Sequence record: NC_048673.1
Strand: one strand, 5' to 3'
Length of the DNA stretch: 64,000 bases
Shown here: positions 49,384-57,179 of the stretch, piece after piece
Numbering within the stretch: the first letter of the stretch is position 1
Layout of the letters: every line of letters begins with the position of its first letter
Made by a program: the position numbers and the translations under genes
Notes under the pieces: model-generated
The model's input: only the letters and a program-made list of their open reading frames with translations
What the model was told of the DNA's origin: nothing
Databases searched by the model: none

Positions 49384-50397
49384 TTAAACTTTGTTAGCTT
49401 TCAACATAAATTTCTTGACAAGAGCTTCCATCTGAGCACCACCAGAAGAACTATGAGATTTCATAGTCTGTACAAGTTCTTTCATCACATCCATGTTTTC
49501 CGGTGTTTCAGTTTCATAGAACGGAGTAGTTACAGACCAACGTTCTTTTGTTCCTGTACGACCACTGATATTCCATACACCCTTTCGCATCCATGTCATA
49601 CGAGAAAAATAAATCACGGAACCGTTACCAATGTCAACTGCGAAATCATCACCGCCCAAATGTTTTCCTTCAAGTTCTTTTTTGACGAAAAGAACATAAT
49701 CGGCTTTCTTGAGCGGTTTAACCTTTTTATCACCAGAAAAAGCTTTCTTTAGCTTGGTTTCTGGGAAAAGGATTTTCGGATCCTTCATAAACTTTTCAGT
49801 TTCGGATTGGTTGTAATTGCTTTGGGTCATTTTTACTTTTTTACGGTCAATCAGAACCTCAGTGAAAACACCCATCTTATCCAACTCAGGTTTATCAATA
49901 CCTGCACCCAGAGCTTTGGTGATAAACACATGAGCCATTGCATTCAGATCAAAGAAAACTGTACGGTCTTCCGACGTAAATTTATAATCGACAGAAGAAG
50001 TTCCCCAAGTACCAACGGTAATTTTACGTTCAAATGTGAACTTTTTACCGCTCATCTTTTGGAAGTAGTCGAGATAAGCCTGAGTATCAAAAAACTTGTC
50101 AAACATATGGGTTACGAAGTTAGTTACAACATGTTTCTCTTCTTCCTGTTTCTGTTTTCGCTGTGCCCATGTAGCTTCTTGGGTTGCAGGAGAACCAGAT
50201 TTTCTCAGTTCTTCGTAAGCTTGGTTTACTGCCTGCATTTTTTCGGTGGAACCACCACGGTCTGGGTGGTTATCCTTTGCTGCCTTGCGATATGCAGCCT
50301 TTAGTTGGTCATCAGTAAACTTACCAGTCAAACCAAGAGCCTTCATCGCGACTGCTTGAGTCATAGATTCAAACAGCTCATTAAACATCTTAGACAT
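49384..50397 (-). CDS. J-domain (DnaJ-like) protein with large unknown C-terminal part
   Basis: LKAAYRKAAKDNHPDRGG...MQAVNQAYEEL with intact HPD; CTAAATA at 50421-50427. Confidence 0.9.
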   Translation of the reverse strand: MSKMFNELFESMTQAVAMKALGLTGKFTDDQLKAAYRKAAKDNHPDRGGSTEKMQAVNQAYEELRKSGSPATQEATWAQRKQKQEEEKHVVTNFVTHMFDKFFDTQAYLDYFQKMSGKKFTFERKITVGTWGTSSVDYKFTSEDRTVFFDLNAMAHVFITKALGAGIDKPELDKMGVFTEVLIDRKKVKMTQSNYNQSETEKFMKDPKILFPETKLKKAFSGDKKVKPLKKADYVLFVKKELEGKHLGGDDFAVDIGNGSVIYFSRMTWMRKGVWNISGRTGTKERWSVTTPFYETETPENMDVMKELVQTMKSHSSSGGAQMEALVKKFMLKANKV

Positions 50398-51652: not shown

Positions 51653-52216
51653 TTAGATTTTACTTTGGAATGGGTGTCCTGCACCGATACCGACCGGGTT
51701 TTGTTTTGGTAGGATTTCCAAATCGTTTACACCAACAACACTCATAGATGAGTAACTAAATGTTACATTACCTATAAGGGCTGGGTTTCCGTCATCAACA
51801 TAGGACAATTCTATATCGTCCAATGAACTCGGGAATGGGTCATGAAACTTGAAAGTCAATACTATATTCTTTTTTGAGTTATCCAGAATATGAACCAAAA
51901 TAGATCTAGGTCTAGCACCCGGTAGATGGGCGGTGGAATTGAAAGTTCTACTATCAGTAACAGAGATCATCCATTGATACAACTCTTTATAAGATTCGAA
52001 ATTTTCATCAATCAAAAATCTAATCCTAAATGGTTCGTAAATGATCTTCGAACCCGGCATAAGTCCGGACGTCATCTGATTTATCGAAACTCTTGTTATA
52101 TCCATTTCCATAGTTGGAAGAACAACAGATTGAGCTGATGTTACAAAGTTGGCGGTTGTGTTTGCGTCTGGGATTTCCAGACGCATGTTTGTTATGTGTG
52201 CTTGATTATGTATCAT
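51653..52216 (-). CDS. 3: Tail completion / tube terminator protein
   Basis: PGSKIIYEPFRIRFLIDENFESYKELYQWM...ILDNSK. Confidence 0.9.
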   Translation of the reverse strand: MIHNQAHITNMRLEIPDANTTANFVTSAQSVVLPTMEMDITRVSINQMTSGLMPGSKIIYEPFRIRFLIDENFESYKELYQWMISVTDSRTFNSTAHLPGARPRSILVHILDNSKKNIVLTFKFHDPFPSSLDDIELSYVDDGNPALIGNVTFSYSSMSVVGVNDLEILPKQNPVGIGAGHPFQSKI

Positions 52217-54081
52217 GTTGACGGTTGAACCCCATATGAATATTGTGGTTGGTCTGGTCTAAATTCACCAAAACCAGACGGTAGAACGGAATTCATACTA
52301 TTATATGTGGTATTATTTACAGCAGCCATTAACGCACCTTCTTGACGTCGTGCATCTCGTTCTTCCTTTTCACGTTGTTGTTTAGCTCGGAATTCTTCAA
52401 CCTCTTGGTTTCTTTTCTCAAGGGTTTTAAATACAGGCTCATTTTCACCCGCCTTAATTTCATTCCCTAATTTAGATTCCGGTTGAGCTTCACTAGCATT
52501 AGCTTTTCCAAACAATGACCCGGTAAGACTTTCCCAAGCACCCTTCGCAGCATCAACACCCTTATCCAACAGATCTGGATTCTCTTTGGCGAAGTTATAC
52601 AACTCATAAGCCATCAAGCCAGCACCAACAAAAGGAATTGCTCTACCGGCGACACGTACCGCCATACCAGCACCAGTTAATGCGCTTTTTGGTATAAATT
52701 TTGAGGCTGATTTTGCAGCATCGGTAGCAACAGACCAACCCTTTTTACCAAGATCAGCAGCCCTTGACAAAATACCAGCCTTCCCTTTAGGGGTAGGTGT
52801 CTTTGTTTTAGGTGTCTCAATTTTTGCTGGTTGCCCCGGTCTTGGTTCTGGTGTAGGTGGCTTCTTTCCATCCGGTTGTGTAGTTTTCGGAGACTTCTTA
52901 GGATCCTTAGACACATCGTTTGGATTAACACCACCAGAGCCAGACGATGGTGTAGGGGTCTTACTTCCCAATCCCGGTATCTTATCAAACAACCCCGAAA
53001 ACTTAGCAATTAAACCACCAACAGCAGCAGATAGGGCACCCGCAATCATAGGAGCCAAACCAAGAACCGCACCAGATAGAACACTGATACCAGAAACAAG
53101 ACCACTAAGAACAAATCCAACACCACCAATCAGTTTACCGATCAACATGGACATCTGGATACCTTTAAGAACATCGATTAAGCTTTTATGACGCTTTTCG
53201 TTGTTCTCTCGTTCTCTTCCATTTTCTTGTCTTTCTTTCTTTTGCTCTTGGTTATTTCTATCTGTTTTTACTTTGTCTTCTGGTTTGTTTTGTGGGATCT
53301 GTTGGAATCTAGAAGTAGCATCAGCCTTCTTCTCTTCATAAGCCGCATTCGCTTTTGCATCTAATTTCTTTTCCTTACGGGCGTTATGTGCATCAATAAT
53401 AGACCCACCAACAAACTTCGTTGCATTAGCGGCCTGATTATAACCGGGAATAGTTGATAACAAATCGTTTATGGTTCCAGTAACCATACCGATACCAGCG
53501 GACATAGTATGACCAAGTATTTTCGCTGTTGCTGATGTTTCTGATTTCTTCATTCGATCAACTATATTAGCTTTTTTTGCTATCTCTCGAACAAATTTAC
53601 CAGTTTTTTGATTTTCTTCTTTGAAATTTTCCACAAATTCACGACGATCACCAACTTCGCGTTGTATAAATTCTTTCAAAGTCTCCCTAGTGTCTTCCTG
53701 CATAGGTTTGGCAGTTTCCCCCTGTTCCGGGTTCTGACTTTTTACACCTTGGCTATAATCCACTAGGGGTTGTTTATTATTTAAAATGTCTTCCAGTTGC
53801 TTTCGTCTAGCTGAAACTAATTCGTTTTCAACCTTATTACTACGCTTATTATCCTTTCTGGCACCTTTTATCTGGTTCGCTAATTTTTCTTGTTCTTGTG
53901 CGACTTCCAGACTGGAATCAGAGGTAATATCATAAGACGCGGTAAGGTCTTTTGTTGAGTTGGACAACTTTTCTGTCTTGTCGTCCAACTTAAGCATCGA
54001 ATCAGAAACAATATCCATAGCATCCGTGACATCTCGAACCGATTTATCAAGTTCGTTCTGTTTCTGCTTGTCAATCATCAC
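52213..54081 (-). CDS. Probable tape measure / baseplate hub protein (gp29-like)
   Basis: 622 aa, coiled-coil and low-complexity with central hydrophobic stretch; GTG start; lies directly after the 26/51-like locus. Confidence 0.6.
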   Translation of the reverse strand: MMIDKQKQNELDKSVRDVTDAMDIVSDSMLKLDDKTEKLSNSTKDLTASYDITSDSSLEVAQEQEKLANQIKGARKDNKRSNKVENELVSARRKQLEDILNNKQPLVDYSQGVKSQNPEQGETAKPMQEDTRETLKEFIQREVGDRREFVENFKEENQKTGKFVREIAKKANIVDRMKKSETSATAKILGHTMSAGIGMVTGTINDLLSTIPGYNQAANATKFVGGSIIDAHNARKEKKLDAKANAAYEEKKADATSRFQQIPQNKPEDKVKTDRNNQEQKKERQENGRERENNEKRHKSLIDVLKGIQMSMLIGKLIGGVGFVLSGLVSGISVLSGAVLGLAPMIAGALSAAVGGLIAKFSGLFDKIPGLGSKTPTPSSGSGGVNPNDVSKDPKKSPKTTQPDGKKPPTPEPRPGQPAKIETPKTKTPTPKGKAGILSRAADLGKKGWSVATDAAKSASKFIPKSALTGAGMAVRVAGRAIPFVGAGLMAYELYNFAKENPDLLDKGVDAAKGAWESLTGSLFGKANASEAQPESKLGNEIKAGENEPVFKTLEKRNQEVEEFRAKQQREKEERDARRQEGALMAAVNNTTYNSMNSVLPSGFGEFRPDQPQYSYGVQPST

Positions 54082-54252
54082 TTAGTCCTTTTCTCTCGCC
54101 TGTTCTTTGAGATCGTTTAGGTAGAGGTGAACATAAACACCAAATTCAAAGGGGGTCATATCCTCAAGATCCGAATGGCTCCATCCATCTTTTCTAAGCT
54201 TATATACCGTATTAAAATGATCGTATATGGTATGGTTAACAAGCGTTATGCG
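54082..54252 (-). CDS. gp51-like C-terminal domain in the -1 frame of the gp26-like gene (56 aa, no credible own start)
   Basis: RITLVNHTIYDHFNTVYKLRKDGWSHSDLEDMTPFEFGVYVHLYLNDLKEQAREKD*; absent from the ORF track; entered via T TTT TTC at 54258-54252. Confidence 0.7.
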   Translation of the reverse strand, partial: RITLVNHTIYDHFNTVYKLRKDGWSHSDLEDMTPFEFGVYVHLYLNDLKEQAREKD

Positions 54253-55031
54253 AAAAAACTTTCTACCCCTTTAAGTGTAACAATTTCTTGGTGTCCACAT
54301 TTTTTACACTTTACAGGTATATTTAGAGTATGTTGGGGGAGGGATGTTACAAATTTACCCATTTTGGTCAAAGCAACTGAATCGGCGTATTCCATAATTT
54401 CAGAAATATCCTCATACGGAATATCAACACCAACCTTAACAACCTGATCTCCCATATGAACTTCGTCAATACAGCGATTGATTAAGTTAAACAAGTCGGA
54501 CTCAACTTCTACGTTGAAATATTCAACCTCGCTGATATTAGGATATCTCATATAAACTGTCATGTTCTCATTCAGAACAATTTTGTTATCTGGTGCATCC
54601 GACAATTTAGCGTTATTCAAGTTTACGTTTACTTTGATATCAGAGCCACAACGAATAATTTCACCATATTGGTCATATTGAACATTACCATCTTCATCAA
54701 GAATTTCGTTGGCGCAAGTAAACATAACCGGAACAGTAGGACTTGCTTTTGATAACTTATACAAAGCTAGATAAACTGCTTCCAAGTCAAACACAGGTAA
54801 AAGGTCTACATCAACATTATCAGTTAGGATACAGTTTTTTACGATTTGGATGATTGCATCATCGATTCCAGTATTGGCTTCGTTAGCTAACATCAACAGT
54901 TTCATTTCTTTCATCAAGAAAGCACGAACCTTGATCTTTCTACCATCTGATAAAGTTACATTGGTCTGCTGTACGTTTTTCTGCATAGCAGCAAGAAGTA
55001 CACTCTTGTCAATTGTGGTTTTGTTTGTCAT
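54246..55031 (-). CDS. 26: Baseplate hub assembly protein, gp26/gp51 family
   Basis: KVRAFLMKEMKLL, LPVFDLEAVYLAL, MRYPN, CKKCGH...KGVESFF; CTAAATA at 55060-55066. Confidence 0.85.
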   Translation of the reverse strand: MTNKTTIDKSVLLAAMQKNVQQTNVTLSDGRKIKVRAFLMKEMKLLMLANEANTGIDDAIIQIVKNCILTDNVDVDLLPVFDLEAVYLALYKLSKASPTVPVMFTCANEILDEDGNVQYDQYGEIIRCGSDIKVNVNLNNAKLSDAPDNKIVLNENMTVYMRYPNISEVEYFNVEVESDLFNLINRCIDEVHMGDQVVKVGVDIPYEDISEIMEYADSVALTKMGKFVTSLPQHTLNIPVKCKKCGHQEIVTLKGVESFFA

Positions 55032-55125: not shown

Positions 55126-55200
55126 CTATAAAGTCTCTATAAGTATTTATATAGAAAATCTATAATTAGAAAGAGTGTGAGCGAAGCGAACAGGCGGCTA
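55126..55200. repeat. Second copy of the AT-rich hairpin element
   Basis: CTATAAGTATTTATATAGAAAATCTATAATTAGAA at 55136-55170 matches 25014-25048 at 34/35. Confidence 0.85.
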
Positions 55201-55239: not shown

Positions 55240-56196
55240 TTAACGAATGGCTTTCACAACGCCTGTAGTACGTCTTATGATACTCTCTATAGAGTCGATG
55301 GTGTTCTCTTCACCCTTAGTAGGAACATGCACTGTAGTTGATACAGCGAATGTGACGGTAAAGGTTGCTACCTGAGAATTGTTCTCAAAATCTAGTTGAA
55401 CTTCACCTACCTCTATGGGAAAGCACCCTGTATTATGTACAGTGGATTGCTTAACTCCATGACGGTCTAACGTGATGACGTCAATATCCTTTGCATACGT
55501 ATTATAAAATCCAAATTGTCCATTTCTTGGGTTGACAATTGTATTCTGCCATGTTAACATCAAAGAACGTTCCTCATAAGAAGGGGAACAGTAAAACGTC
55601 ATACTCATGGTTCCGTAGTTTCTACCTCTTACTTCGTGTCGAGGTAGTTTGTCTGTACGGTTGATTGTCGTTTCCAAAGTAGAACTAGGGAGTCCGACGC
55701 TTTTTACCATAAGTGCAAGATCGCGGTTTACATCATAATCGGTTCCCAGAAATCCATCAAGGATCTCTCCTGCTCCCGGTATGATCCGGATCAAGGACGG
55801 ATCCCAAGCACCAAAAATCTTCTTCATGCTAGGCGTGAGGATTTTGTGTGCTTGTCCCAAAGCAATGTCCTGAACTCTATGCCAAGCATAACTTGTACCA
55901 GAGAAAAGACTATCATTGACGTCCATCCCGCTGCTTGAGTCCGGAAATATCGGTAAATCCCTATCAAAAACACCATCACTGAATATAGAGGTTCGGAAAT
56001 CTCCGAACCTTACAATAAACATGTTTGGTCTAGCCAAATCGGTATTCTCAACTTTCCGCATAAACCTAGTTAGATCGGGGATCTCGCTTGCATCCCCACC
56101 ATCGTTTAATAAATCTTCACCAAACCCGATAGTACTATCTATCATACTATCTATGGTTGGAATAGGTGGTATTAAGTTCATTAGTATGATCTCCAA
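55240..56196 (-). CDS. 54: Baseplate tail-tube initiator
   Basis: DLARPNMF, MSMTFY, WQNTIV, GCFPIEVGEVQLDFENNSQVATFTVTFA. Confidence 0.88.
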   Translation of the reverse strand: MEIILMNLIPPIPTIDSMIDSTIGFGEDLLNDGGDASEIPDLTRFMRKVENTDLARPNMFIVRFGDFRTSIFSDGVFDRDLPIFPDSSSGMDVNDSLFSGTSYAWHRVQDIALGQAHKILTPSMKKIFGAWDPSLIRIIPGAGEILDGFLGTDYDVNRDLALMVKSVGLPSSTLETTINRTDKLPRHEVRGRNYGTMSMTFYCSPSYEERSLMLTWQNTIVNPRNGQFGFYNTYAKDIDVITLDRHGVKQSTVHNTGCFPIEVGEVQLDFENNSQVATFTVTFAVSTTVHVPTKGEENTIDSIESIIRRTTGVVKAIR

Positions 56197-57179
56197 ACGG
56201 AATTCGTATTATAGGTCTTCGGAGGAACACCAGATACAAACCGTTGAGTCGGTAGATTAATAACAGAACTCCAATCCTGCGGTTTAATCTCCATTAATGG
56301 ACCCTTAATATGACCCGGCAAATACGCTTTGATCATATGGTCTGCACCTCTCATTCCCTTAACCTTACCCCAGTTGATATTTAGGGATGTACGGTTGGTA
56401 ATCCTCTCTGTGGTTGCATGTTTCAGCAACTCTTCCATAAATTCTTTACGGGCTTTGATCGGGATGTAGTGAAGGTTGAGACCCAACATCAAACCTTTGT
56501 GTTTTGCACTTAGGCCAAGATATACGATCAGGGGGAATTTATCCCAGTATGGTAGTGTTGCCTTATGTTTTGCGTCATATGCGAAAGTATACAATCGACC
56601 AGCAATTGGTCTTGTTACTTGGTGACCACGAACGTTTTTCTTTATGAAATTGTTAAACCATTCCGTTGACTTCTTCTGAGACTTCACAGGCTCTTTTTCG
56701 TGTTGCCTTACTTTATTTCTAAAGTCAGCCAATAGCATCTGATATTTTTCGGCTTTAGATAGTTTTCTTCCGCTTATTTGTGCGTCTTTTAATTTCTTAG
56801 CCAGTAGAATATCTTGCTTGAATCTTCTGAATGCCCGTTCCGTGGTTTCTTTATTAAGTCCACGTCCTTCAATATAATTTTTTAGAGTAATGCTACTCTT
56901 TTCTTTTTGTGTCAAATAATCAACACCAAGCTCAATCCATTGTTGTTTATTCTTGTTTGGGTTTACCAGAGAATAATAAGTCTTTATTTCTTCTCTGTGT
57001 CTGCGCATAGCTCTACTGAATGTTTCATAATTCAACCCTTTTTCCTCTGCATATTTCTTTGCAGTAAGACTTGGGTTCTTTTTCTTGGCGTTCATATAAT
57101 CAACACCAACATCAATCCATTGTTTTCTATTGCGTTTTTCTGTTGTGGACTCTGCACGTTCAGTTATTTCGAATATCAT
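56181..57179 (-). CDS. 2: DNA end protector, with duplicated N-terminal module
   Basis: GRLYTFAYDAKHKATLPYWDKFPLIVYLG...GLNLHYIP...IKAYLPG. Confidence 0.95.
   Translation of the reverse strand: MIFEITERAESTTEKRNRKQWIDVGVDYMNAKKKNPSLTAKKYAEEKGLNYETFSRAMRRHREEIKTYYSLVNPNKNKQQWIELGVDYLTQKEKSSITLKNYIEGRGLNKETTERAFRRFKQDILLAKKLKDAQISGRKLSKAEKYQMLLADFRNKVRQHEKEPVKSQKKSTEWFNNFIKKNVRGHQVTRPIAGRLYTFAYDAKHKATLPYWDKFPLIVYLGLSAKHKGLMLGLNLHYIPIKARKEFMEELLKHATTERITNRTSLNINWGKVKGMRGADHMIKAYLPGHIKGPLMEIKPQDWSSVINLPTQRFVSGVPPKTYNTNSVWRSY

What the first reader, a model, noticed from the sequence alone, without database searches (positions are those of the whole stretch)
54082..55031. Predicted -1 frameshift makes both gp26-like and gp51-like proteins from one gene (lambda G/G-T logic in a T4-like phage)
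Seen: the gp26-like ORF ends GAA AGT TTT TTC GCA TAA (minus strand), containing a canonical X XXY YYZ slippery heptamer T TTT TTC at 54258-54252. The -1 frame stays open for 56 codons (RITLVNHTIYDHFNTVYKLRKDGWSHSDLEDMTPFEFGVYVHLYLNDLKEQAREKD) and stops at 54082-84, abutting the GTG of the tape-measure-like gene. That frame has a TAA a few codons before the heptamer and no ATG/GTG/TTG until its last 25 codons, so it has no credible start. An SD-like AAGGGG lies 7 nt upstream of the heptamer. Known: tail assembly chaperones in lambda and many long-tailed phages are made as G and G-T by such a shift just before the tape measure gene; T4 has separate genes 26 and 51, and as I recall gp51 ends in a similar Y..N..L...YS...I..M.P.E domain. 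Inference: here 261-aa (gp26-like) and 316-aa (gp51-like) products come from one gene, suggesting T4 26/51 are a duplicated, fixed G/G-T pair.
Basis: partly seen in the sequence, partly recalled or inferred. Interest (0 to 1): 0.9.

Follow-up and report, generated by a model that had tools for sequence, protein, structure and literature searches.

The report
Frameshifted tail chaperone gene, already described
This Aeromonas T4-like phage very probably makes a short and a long tail-assembly chaperone from one gene by a ribosomal slip, where T4 uses two separate genes (26 and 51); the reading is well supported but was published for T4-like phages in 2022.

Summary
The gp26-like ORF (54246-55031, minus) ends xxT TTT TTC GCA TAA. 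The -1 frame is open for 56 codons, up to the start of the next gene, and has no usable start codon.

Comparative evidence for a programmed -1 frameshift is strong:
- Twenty of 21 lineages of T4-related phages, and 80 of 80 cyanophage contigs, keep T TTT TT(C/T) zero to two codons before the stop.
- In 66 distinct cyanophage genes, only 5 of 92 conserved degenerate codons have an invariant third base. Three of those five are the heptamer codons.
- The extension shows coding periodicity from its first codons.
- It matches the C-terminal tail of T4 gp51 (PHROG 634, E 1.7e-11; hhalign E 3e-5).
- T4 gp51 is a gp26-type domain (PF12322, residues 1-201) followed in frame by that tail.

The SD-like run is not conserved, there is no conserved downstream RNA structure, and the downstream 622-aa protein shows no detectable similarity to T4 gp29.

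The idea is not new. Vladimirov, Gautam and Davidson (Virology 2022) identified these genes as the tail assembly chaperones of T4-like phages. I know that paper only through two citing papers. None of the 15 GenBank/RefSeq records I inspected annotates a joined product. No expression data were available.

The parts
54246..55031 (-). gp26-like gene (0 frame, 261 aa); the short form of the proposed tail/hub assembly chaperone
   Evidence: PF12322 T4_baseplate E 2.5e-54. phrog_150 baseplate hub E 7.4e-59. BLASTP to T4 gp26 E 4e-13, aligned to the shared C-terminal FF. AF2 model pLDDT 89.5.
54252..54258 (-). Slippery heptamer T TTT TTC in X XXY YYZ register
   Evidence: Conserved in 20 of 21 lineages and 80 of 80 cyanophage loci. 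Its three wobble bases are invariant in 66 distinct cyanophage genes while neighbouring wobble bases vary.
54246..54248 (-). 0-frame stop TAA, one codon after the heptamer
   Evidence: The spacing is one codon in 17 of the 20 lineages that have a heptamer, zero codons in 1 and two codons in 2. It is one codon in 80 of 80 cyanophage loci.
54082..54252 (-). -1-frame extension: 56 codons plus stop TAA 54084-54082, homologous to the gp51 C-terminal tail
   Evidence: phrog_634 'baseplate hub assembly catalyst', positions 58-112 of 121, E 1.7e-11. An alignment of 13 extensions against T4 gp51 residues 206-243 gives hhalign E 3e-5, and nothing against T4 gp26. Nucleotide diversity by codon position is 0.21/0.11/0.43 in cyanophage relatives.
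54266..54271 (-). SD-like AAGGGG, 7 nt upstream of the heptamer; probably not a stimulator
   Evidence: Present in the window. It overlaps the conserved Gly codon, which varies among GGG/GGA/GGT/GGC in relatives.
52213..54081 (-). Downstream 622-aa gene (GenBank start ATG 54078); candidate tape measure by position and size only
   Evidence: phrog_11300, unknown function. No Pfam hit. No similarity to T4 gp29/PF25671. Weak coiled-coil-type hit at residues 5-220. Its start abuts or overlaps the stop of the -1 ORF in the window and relatives.
55144..55151 (-). TATAAATA octamer, 113 nt upstream of the gp26-like start; possible T4-type late promoter
   Evidence: Read directly. The promoter function is inferred from general knowledge of T4 late promoters and was not tested.
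55240..56196 (-). Upstream gp54-like tube-initiator gene (tube-fold protein preceding the chaperone gene)
   Evidence: phrog_45 tail tube E 1.1e-46. PF06841 weak hit. Annotated as baseplate-tail tube initiator in phage Assk.
51653..52216 (-). gp3-like tail completion / tube terminator gene, following the large gene
   Evidence: PF06841 E 1.3e-06. phrog_45. Annotation.

Best explanation
The window comes from an Aeromonas T4-related phage of the AS-zj/Assk/CC2 group (Straboviridae, Ceceduovirus). Its gp26-like gene is a two-product assembly-chaperone gene. Most ribosomes read ...Ser-Phe-Phe-Ala-stop and release the 261-aa short form. A minority slip back one base while the two Phe-tRNAs sit on UUU UUC within U UUU UUC. 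After the slip both tRNAs pair with UUU, so pairing is kept. These ribosomes continue in the -1 frame for 56 more codons and make a 316-aa long form. Its added tail corresponds to the C-terminal tail of T4 gp51. The long-form ORF ends at the start of the next large gene. By analogy with lambda G/GT and P2 E/E+E', the shared N-terminal part would hold the tape-measure or hub protein, and the tail of the rare long form would dock it to tube or hub subunits. In Tevenvirinae the same two proteins are made from two separate genes, 26 (short) and 51 (long, in frame).

Shown here: the sequence anatomy, the conservation, the coding signal and the homology to gp51.
Inferred: that slippage happens at all, its efficiency, and the division of labour between the two forms.
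For: 1. Anatomy.
2. Heptamer distribution: xxT TTT TTC one codon before the stop is found in Ceceduovirus, Ishigurovirus, Angelvirus, Chrysonvirus, Cinqassovirus, Citrobacter phage Ci1, Vibrio Schizotequatrovirus, Kyanoviridae, Pseudomonas Otagovirus, Xanthomonas X1 and 10 uncultivated contigs. T TTT TTT is found in RSP15 and two uncultivated lineages.
3. The codon supplying the first T is AGT, GAT, AAT, TCT or GCT. That is four different amino acids, always with T in the third position.
4. In 66 distinct cyanophage genes, 5 of 92 conserved degenerate columns have an invariant third base, and 3 of them are the heptamer codons. Elsewhere in the gene Phe uses TTT 526 times and TTC 236 times.
5. 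The -1 frame is coding. Diversity by codon position is 0.21/0.11/0.43, and 0.18/0.16/0.50 within codons 2-18. The other two frames carry 5-6 stops each.
6. No start codon. The second codon of the extension is ATA/TTA/TTG/CTG/CTA/GTA/ATT. The first canonical start is at codon 31 in the window and at codon 18-19 in most cyanophages.
7. Homology to gp51. The peptide hits phrog_634 at E 1.7e-11. T4 gp51 hits phrog_634 at residues 147-246 and PF12322 at residues 1-201. hhalign E is 3e-5 to gp51 residues 206-243. In alignment A2, gp51 continues past the FF column colinearly with the -1 peptide.
8. Tevenvirinae gp26 genes end TTC TTT plus three more codons. This is not slippery, and gene 25 follows.
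9. Literature.
Against: No expression evidence was available (no proteomics, ribosome profiling or RNA data). No conserved downstream RNA structure was found, and the window's 109 nt fold no better than shuffles (z +0.63). The upstream SD-like run is not conserved. About half of the lineages have ATG or TTG overlapping the 0-frame stop. Vibrio phage D493 has that overlap and no canonical heptamer, so a free-standing small protein is possible in some relatives. The run of six T could in principle also support transcriptional slippage, which would give the same protein. [quoted passage not shown] I could not read the paper to see exactly which phages that refers to.
Confidence: 0.85

Rival explanations
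1. The extension is translated on its own as a free peptide of about 56 aa (or 25 aa). This would happen by termination-reinitiation at the gp26 stop or from the internal ATG at 54159-54157, with no fusion to gp26.
For: Several relatives have ATG or TTG overlapping the 0-frame stop: Vibrio PG216, RSP15, L027, L029, L030, L033, L034 and PX29. Vibrio D493 has TAATG and no canonical heptamer. Annotators have called such small ORFs.
Against: In the window, Ishigurovirus, phiAS5, Aeh1, Ahp1, Ci1, S-RIM12-type cyanophages, Astolliot and X1, the codon overlapping the stop is ATA/TTA/CTG/CTA/GTA/ATT. The first canonical start comes 8-31 codons later, yet the earlier codons show coding periodicity. The heptamer (20 of 21 lineages) is more conserved than any start codon. 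T4 gp51 carries the same tail fused in frame to the gp26-type domain.
Confidence: 0.07
2. The long form arises by transcriptional slippage. RNA polymerase adds one extra U in the run of six, so a fraction of mRNAs carry the two parts in one frame. The protein products would be the same as with ribosomal slippage.
For: The site is a homopolymer of 6 T, or 7 T in three lineages. Both mechanisms predict conservation of the first T. The comparative data cannot separate them.
Against: From general knowledge, efficient slippage by bacterial RNA polymerase needs longer runs, about 8-9 or more. The base after the run is kept as C in 66 of 66 cyanophage genes and in 17 of the 20 lineages with a heptamer. 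Slippage by polymerase would be favoured by a longer run. The run sits exactly in X XXY YYZ register in every case, although the Phe-Phe codons force that register.
Confidence: 0.07
3. There is no second product. The 165-nt stretch is a non-coding spacer or a decayed gene remnant, or the frame change is an assembly error in a homopolymer.
For: Most GenBank records leave the stretch unannotated.
Against: The same arrangement appears in more than 100 independent assemblies from many laboratories and metagenomes. The stretch has strong third-position periodicity and no stops in one frame only. It also has profile homology to gp51.
Confidence: 0.01

Closest known systems
T4 gp26 and gp51 (baseplate hub assembly chaperones; PF12322), described as the tail assembly chaperone pair of T4-like phages by Vladimirov, Gautam and Davidson, Virology 2022 (PMID 34826709)
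   Same: The 0-frame product is a PF12322 protein that ends at the same FF as T4 gp26. The -1 tail matches the last 50 or so residues of T4 gp51, which is PF12322 plus that tail. The PRFect paper says some T4-like phages carry a short gene and a longer fused copy instead of frameshifting. The phage Adele paper says poly-T slippery sequences are known in the TAC-N genes of T4-like phages.
   Different: Here there is one gene with a slip site instead of two divergently transcribed genes. The gene lies between gp54 and a large unannotated gene, not next to genes 25 and 27. I could not read the 2022 paper, so I do not know whether Aeromonas Ceceduovirus was included.
Lambda G/GT and the conserved tail-assembly-chaperone frameshift of long-tailed phages (Xu, Hendrix and Duda, Mol Cell 2004; cited)
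   Same: There are two products sharing an N-terminus. A -1 slip occurs at an X XXY YYZ heptamer near the end of the short ORF. The gene sits after a tube-fold gene and directly before a large gene. No stimulatory RNA structure is evident.
   Different: The sequence family is different. Fold similarity to a solved TAC (HK97, 2ob9) is the top-ranked hit but not significant (E 0.094, TM 0.42-0.45). The protein is about twice the size of lambda-type chaperones and has four conserved Cys. The downstream gene is not demonstrably a tape measure.
P2 E/E+E' and Mu gp41 family (Pfam PF10109 Phage_TAC_7), the chaperone pair of contractile-tailed phages
   Same: It belongs to a contractile-tail phage. 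The slip site is T-rich (for P2 this is from my own recollection, not checked). Sub-threshold PF10109 hits occur in 6 of 36 gp26-like homologues, best E 0.052.
   Different: The hits are far below the Pfam threshold, so family membership is not shown.

Membership tests
PF12322 T4_baseplate (gp26/gp51 family) | Significant match to the family profile over its full length | tested here: met
   E 2.5e-54, 184.7 bits against a cut-off of 24.5, profile positions 6-219 of 219. T4 gp26 and gp51 both match the same profile.
gp51-type C-terminal tail (PHROG 634, 'baseplate hub assembly catalyst') | The -1 peptide matches the same profile region as the C-terminus of T4 gp51 | tested here: met
   The window peptide matches positions 58-112 of 121 at E 1.7e-11. 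T4 gp51 residues 147-246 match positions 2-103. hhalign of 13 extensions against gp51 residues 206-243 gives E 3e-5, probability 73%. The control against gp26 is negative. Pairwise BLASTP alone does not detect the similarity.
Programmed -1 ribosomal frameshift site | X XXY YYZ heptamer in the 0 frame, conserved beyond what the protein requires | tested here: met
   (20 of 21 lineages; 80 of 80 cyanophage loci; 3 of the 5 invariant wobble positions among 92).
Programmed -1 ribosomal frameshift site | Downstream stimulatory hairpin or pseudoknot, or an upstream SD-like stimulator | tested here: not met
   RNAalifold finds no consensus pairs in 13 lineages. The window's z-score is +0.63. The SD-like run is not conserved. 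These elements are not required in lambda-type chaperone frameshifts (general knowledge).
Programmed -1 ribosomal frameshift site | A trans-frame protein is actually made | not testable with these tools
   No proteomic or ribosome-profiling data were on hand.
Phage tail assembly chaperone (lambda G/GT type) | Gene order: tube-type gene, then chaperone gene with overlapping -1 ORF, then tape measure gene | tested here: inconclusive
   A gp54-like tube-fold gene lies upstream and a large 622-aa gene downstream. The same order is seen in Vibrio, cyanophage, Pseudomonas and Xanthomonas relatives. The large gene has no detectable similarity to T4 gp29/PF25671 or to other tape measure families. In RSP15 and D493 the next gene is something else.
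Phage tail assembly chaperone (lambda G/GT type) | TAC fold or TAC sequence family | tested here: inconclusive
   For the N-terminal domain, the top PDB hit is the HK97 tail assembly chaperone 2ob9, but at E 0.094, probability 0.84, TM 0.42-0.45. Hits to 3klu and 5ir0 are lower. PF10109 is sub-threshold in 6 of 36 homologues. There is no PDB hit by sequence profile.
Phage tail assembly chaperone (lambda G/GT type) | Binds the tape measure and tube proteins; absent from the virion | not testable with these tools
   The T4 review lists gp26 and gp51 as hub assembly chaperones and says gp51 is absent from the particle. Nothing is known for this phage.

The most novel reading that the evidence does not exclude
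The one-gene frameshift arrangement is the ancestral and by far the most widespread state across the whole T4 superfamily (Straboviridae outside Tevenvirinae, Kyanoviridae, Otagovirus, many uncultivated marine myoviruses). It appears to work without any RNA stimulator other than a stop codon held one codon after the heptamer. Lineages have left this state in at least two ways: gene duplication with an in-frame long copy (Tevenvirinae), and a free-standing small ORF coupled through a TAATG overlap (Vibrio phage D493 type). Whether the 2022 paper already covers this breadth, the fixed stop spacing and the D493-type solution I could not check.
Probability: 0.3. Interest if true: 0.4.

Novelty: already known. 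Interest (0 to 1): 0.25.

Why it matters
T4 was long the odd one out among long-tailed phages, because it had no recognised tail assembly chaperone frameshift. Loci like this one explain why: most T4 relatives do have it, and T4 itself has split it into genes 26 and 51. That point is already in the literature. The practical value here is for annotation. In all 15 GenBank/RefSeq records I inspected, the long form is missing. The extension is either left as an empty gap or called as a truncated small ORF with an arbitrary start, sometimes named 'baseplate hub assembly catalyst'. Gene callers will keep reporting that these phages lack gp51 unless the joined product is annotated.

Tried and rejected
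- Pairwise BLASTP of the 56-aa peptide and of the gp26-like protein against T4 gp51 found nothing. Only profile methods show the relation.
- Pfam and NCBIfam have no model for the extension.
- The search for a downstream stimulatory RNA structure was negative.
- The SD-like stimulator was rejected because it is not conserved.
- Tests of the 622-aa protein as a T4 gp29 or tape measure homologue were negative: hhalign probability 0.6% and no Pfam tape measure hit. tblastn with T4 gp29 finds 42 Aeromonas phage records, but I could not tell whether any is a Ceceduovirus.
- Sequence-profile searches of the PDB with the gp26 family gave no meaningful hits.
- The search for related loci failed with the broad alignment and found nothing with the D493 protein.
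- Seven literature searches found nothing. An eighth led to the PRFect paper, whose text named the 2022 paper. That paper itself is not held.
- A chromosomal gp26-like gene of Aeromonas salmonicida was checked as a possible further example. It lacks both the heptamer and the extension.

Full report
**What the window is.** The 1.2-kb region is 100% identical to Aeromonas phages AS-zj and Assk, and 97-99% identical to CC2 and other Ceceduovirus genomes (Straboviridae, Emmerichvirinae). The surrounding minus-strand genes run as follows:
- gp4 (head completion), then gp2, then gp54-like (55240-56196).
- the gp26-like gene (54246-55031).
- a 165-nt stretch that most records leave unannotated.
- a 622-aa gene (52213-54081), then gp3-like, gp1 dNMP kinase and gp57A-like.

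On the plus strand lie gp48, gp53, a hub protein, gp5 and a PAAR protein. An octamer TATAAATA sits 113 nt before the gp26 start.

**The observation.**
- The ORF ends AGT TTT TTC GCA TAA.
- T TTT TTC at 54258-54252 is in X XXY YYZ register.
- The -1 frame is closed by a TAA 13 nt before the heptamer. It is then open for 56 codons after it, and stops at 54084-54082, right against the GTG/ATG of the next gene.
- The first canonical start codon in that frame is at codon 31.
- The heptamer as a bare string is common: 23 copies in the window against about 34 expected. The case therefore rests on context and comparison, not on the string.

**Is the -1 ORF a real coding sequence, and what is it?** The 56-aa translation matches PHROG 634, 'baseplate hub assembly catalyst' (the name used for gp51), at E 1.7e-11 over profile positions 58-112 of 121.

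I fetched T4 genes 26 and 51 from record HM137666, which a tblastn search had returned.
- T4 gp51 (249 aa) matches PF12322 over residues 1-201 and PHROG 634 over residues 147-246.
- T4 gp26 (208 aa) matches PF12322 over residues 1-206 and does not match PHROG 634.
- An alignment of 13 extension peptides from different lineages (A1) aligns to gp51 residues 206-243 by hhalign at E 3e-5. It aligns to nothing in gp26.
- In a joint alignment (A2), gp51 runs through the column of the shared C-terminal Phe. It continues with residues that parallel the first residues of the -1 peptide. Two other Tevenvirinae gp51 proteins do the same.

So T4 gp51 has exactly the architecture that a -1 shift at the heptamer would produce here. 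I compared the two pieces separately and did not build the joined sequence.

**Conservation of the slip site.**
- The gp26-like gene ends xxT TTT TTC xxx stop in nine genomes of six lineages of Aeromonas and Citrobacter phages, which share only 31-82% identity in the extension.
- The same ending is found in a KVP40-type Vibrio phage, a marine cyanophage, Pseudomonas phage Astolliot (stop directly after the heptamer) and Xanthomonas phage X1.
- It is also found in ten uncultivated IMG/VR contigs at 25-32% protein identity.
- Ralstonia phage RSP15 and two uncultivated lineages have T TTT TTT instead.
- In total, 20 of 21 lineages carry a canonical heptamer.
- The codon that supplies the first T is AGT, GAT, AAT, TCT or GCT: different amino acids, always ending in T.
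- All 80 cyanophage contigs found with the S-RIM12 protein have the heptamer and a stop one codon later.
- Among their 66 distinct genes, 92 alignment columns hold a conserved amino acid with a degenerate codon. Only 5 of these have an invariant third base, and 3 of the 5 are the three heptamer codons. The codons on either side vary freely. Picking three named columns that all fall among 5 of 92 has a probability of roughly 1e-4. The sequences are related, so this is indicative rather than exact.

**Coding signal and lack of a start.**
- In 55 distinct cyanophage extensions, nucleotide diversity by -1-frame codon position is 0.21/0.11/0.43. Within codons 2-18 alone it is 0.18/0.16/0.50.
- The other two frames carry 5-6 stops each.
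- The first ATG/GTG/TTG is usually at codon 18-19 in cyanophages and at codon 31 in the window.
- The codon overlapping the 0-frame stop is ATA, TTA, CTG, CTA, GTA or ATT in about half of the lineages.

Independent initiation therefore cannot account for the conserved N-terminal third of the extension in those lineages.

The other half do have ATG or TTG overlapping the stop. One lineage (Vibrio phage D493) has that overlap and no canonical heptamer. A free-standing small protein therefore remains possible in some relatives, and I keep it as a rival.

**Stimulators.**
- RNAalifold finds no shared structure in the 100 nt after the heptamer across 13 lineages.
- The window's own sequence folds no better than shuffles.
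That codon varies among GGG/GGA/GGT/GGC in relatives, so the run is not under nucleotide-level selection.
- The only conserved local feature besides the heptamer is the stop codon, which follows after one codon in most lineages (zero or two codons in three of them).
- Transcriptional slippage on the T6 run would give the same protein and cannot be excluded by comparison. The short run and the conserved C after it argue mildly against it.

**Tail assembly chaperone logic.**
- Gene order supports the analogy with lambda V-G-T-H: a tube-fold gene, then this gene with its -1 ORF, then a large gene, then a tube terminator. The order recurs in distant relatives.
- An AlphaFold model of the short form is confident (pLDDT 89.5). 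It shows a fold that is widespread in large myoviruses.
- For its N-terminal domain, the best PDB match is the HK97 tail assembly chaperone 2ob9. However, E is 0.094 and TM is 0.42-0.45, so this is suggestive only.
- Six of 36 homologues give sub-threshold hits to Pfam Phage_TAC_7, the P2 E/Mu 41 family.
- The downstream 622-aa protein evolves fast and has no detectable similarity to T4 gp29 or to any tape measure family. Its tape measure role is inferred from position and size.

**Duplication in T4.**
- Tevenvirinae (T4, EcS1, NP4) have gene 26 ending TTC TTT plus three more codons, followed by gene 25. They have a separate, divergently transcribed gene 51 next to genes 27-28-29.
- A crude neighbour-joining tree of the shared domain groups Tevenvirinae gp26 and gp51 together, apart from all single-gene lineages (72% of 50 bootstraps).
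- This agrees with a duplication at the base of that subfamily, but long-branch effects cannot be excluded.

**Prior knowledge.** Seven full-text searches found nothing. An eighth search listed the PRFect paper (PMC10885494). That paper states that some T4-like phages, instead of frameshifting, carry one short TAC gene and one longer fused copy. It cites Vladimirov, Gautam and Davidson, Virology 2022;566:9-15. A 2025 paper on phage Adele (PMC12846349) cites the same work for poly-T slippery sequences in the TAC-N genes of T4-like phages. The 2022 paper is not held in the library, so I know its content only through these two sentences and its title. Pfam already groups gp26 and gp51 in one family. 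A KVP40-type GenBank note already remarks on a gp51-like stretch. The finding is therefore a correct, independent rediscovery of something published. What remains is an annotation gap: none of the 15 records I inspected carries a joined CDS.

**Verdict.** The mechanism is not yet shown by expression data here. The kind of feature is already known, so interest is low to moderate.

None was used as a query, and none is quoted in this report except where the window itself shows the letters. I built no sequence joined across the frameshift.

Noticed in passing
L037:8001-8732 (Aeromonas salmonicida chromosome, GCA_053365915.1); also protein P0032 (Photobacterium damselae): Bacterial chromosomes carry a PF12322 gp26-like gene that NCBI names 'T4 family baseplate hub assembly chaperone'. 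The Aeromonas copy has neither the heptamer nor the extension. It sits next to a PF21817 CapR-domain gene and two resolvase/recombinase genes, which suggests a mobile island rather than a T4-like prophage.
   Followed up: partly
L016:3140-3390 (Vibrio phage D493): This is the only lineage seen without a canonical heptamer (its gene ends TCA CTT TTC AAG TAA). The homologous extension ORF has an ATG overlapping the stop (TAATG), and the next gene is gp5-like rather than a large tape-measure-like gene. It may be a third way of expressing the tail.
   Followed up: partly
window 55144-55151 (-): A TATAAATA octamer lies 113 nt upstream of the gp26-like start, in the 208-nt gap after gp54. It looks like a T4-type late promoter that would head the gp26/extension/622-aa/gp3 unit.
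   Followed up: no
window 49384-50397 (-): A 337-aa phage protein with a DnaJ (J) domain at residues 20-66 (PF00226, E 6.9e-09). The rest of the protein matches only PHROGs of unknown function.
   Followed up: no
window 56181-57179 (-): The gp2 DNA-end-protector homologue (residues 137-332) carries an extra N-terminal part that matches an 'HTH DNA binding protein' PHROG (residues 1-69).
   Followed up: no
L014:3103-5325 (Xanthomonas phage X1): The large gene that follows the chaperone pair in X1 has peptidase- and endolysin-like PHROG matches at residues 257-398. This is a common feature of tape measure proteins and gives indirect support for that role in this gene position.
   Followed up: no
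L003:3855-3935, L005:4710-4883, L006:1555-1677, L012:3268-3405: Public records annotate the extension inconsistently. It appears as 26- to 57-aa ORFs starting at internal ATG or at TTG, is sometimes named 'baseplate hub assembly catalyst', or is not annotated at all. None is joined to gp26.
   Followed up: yes
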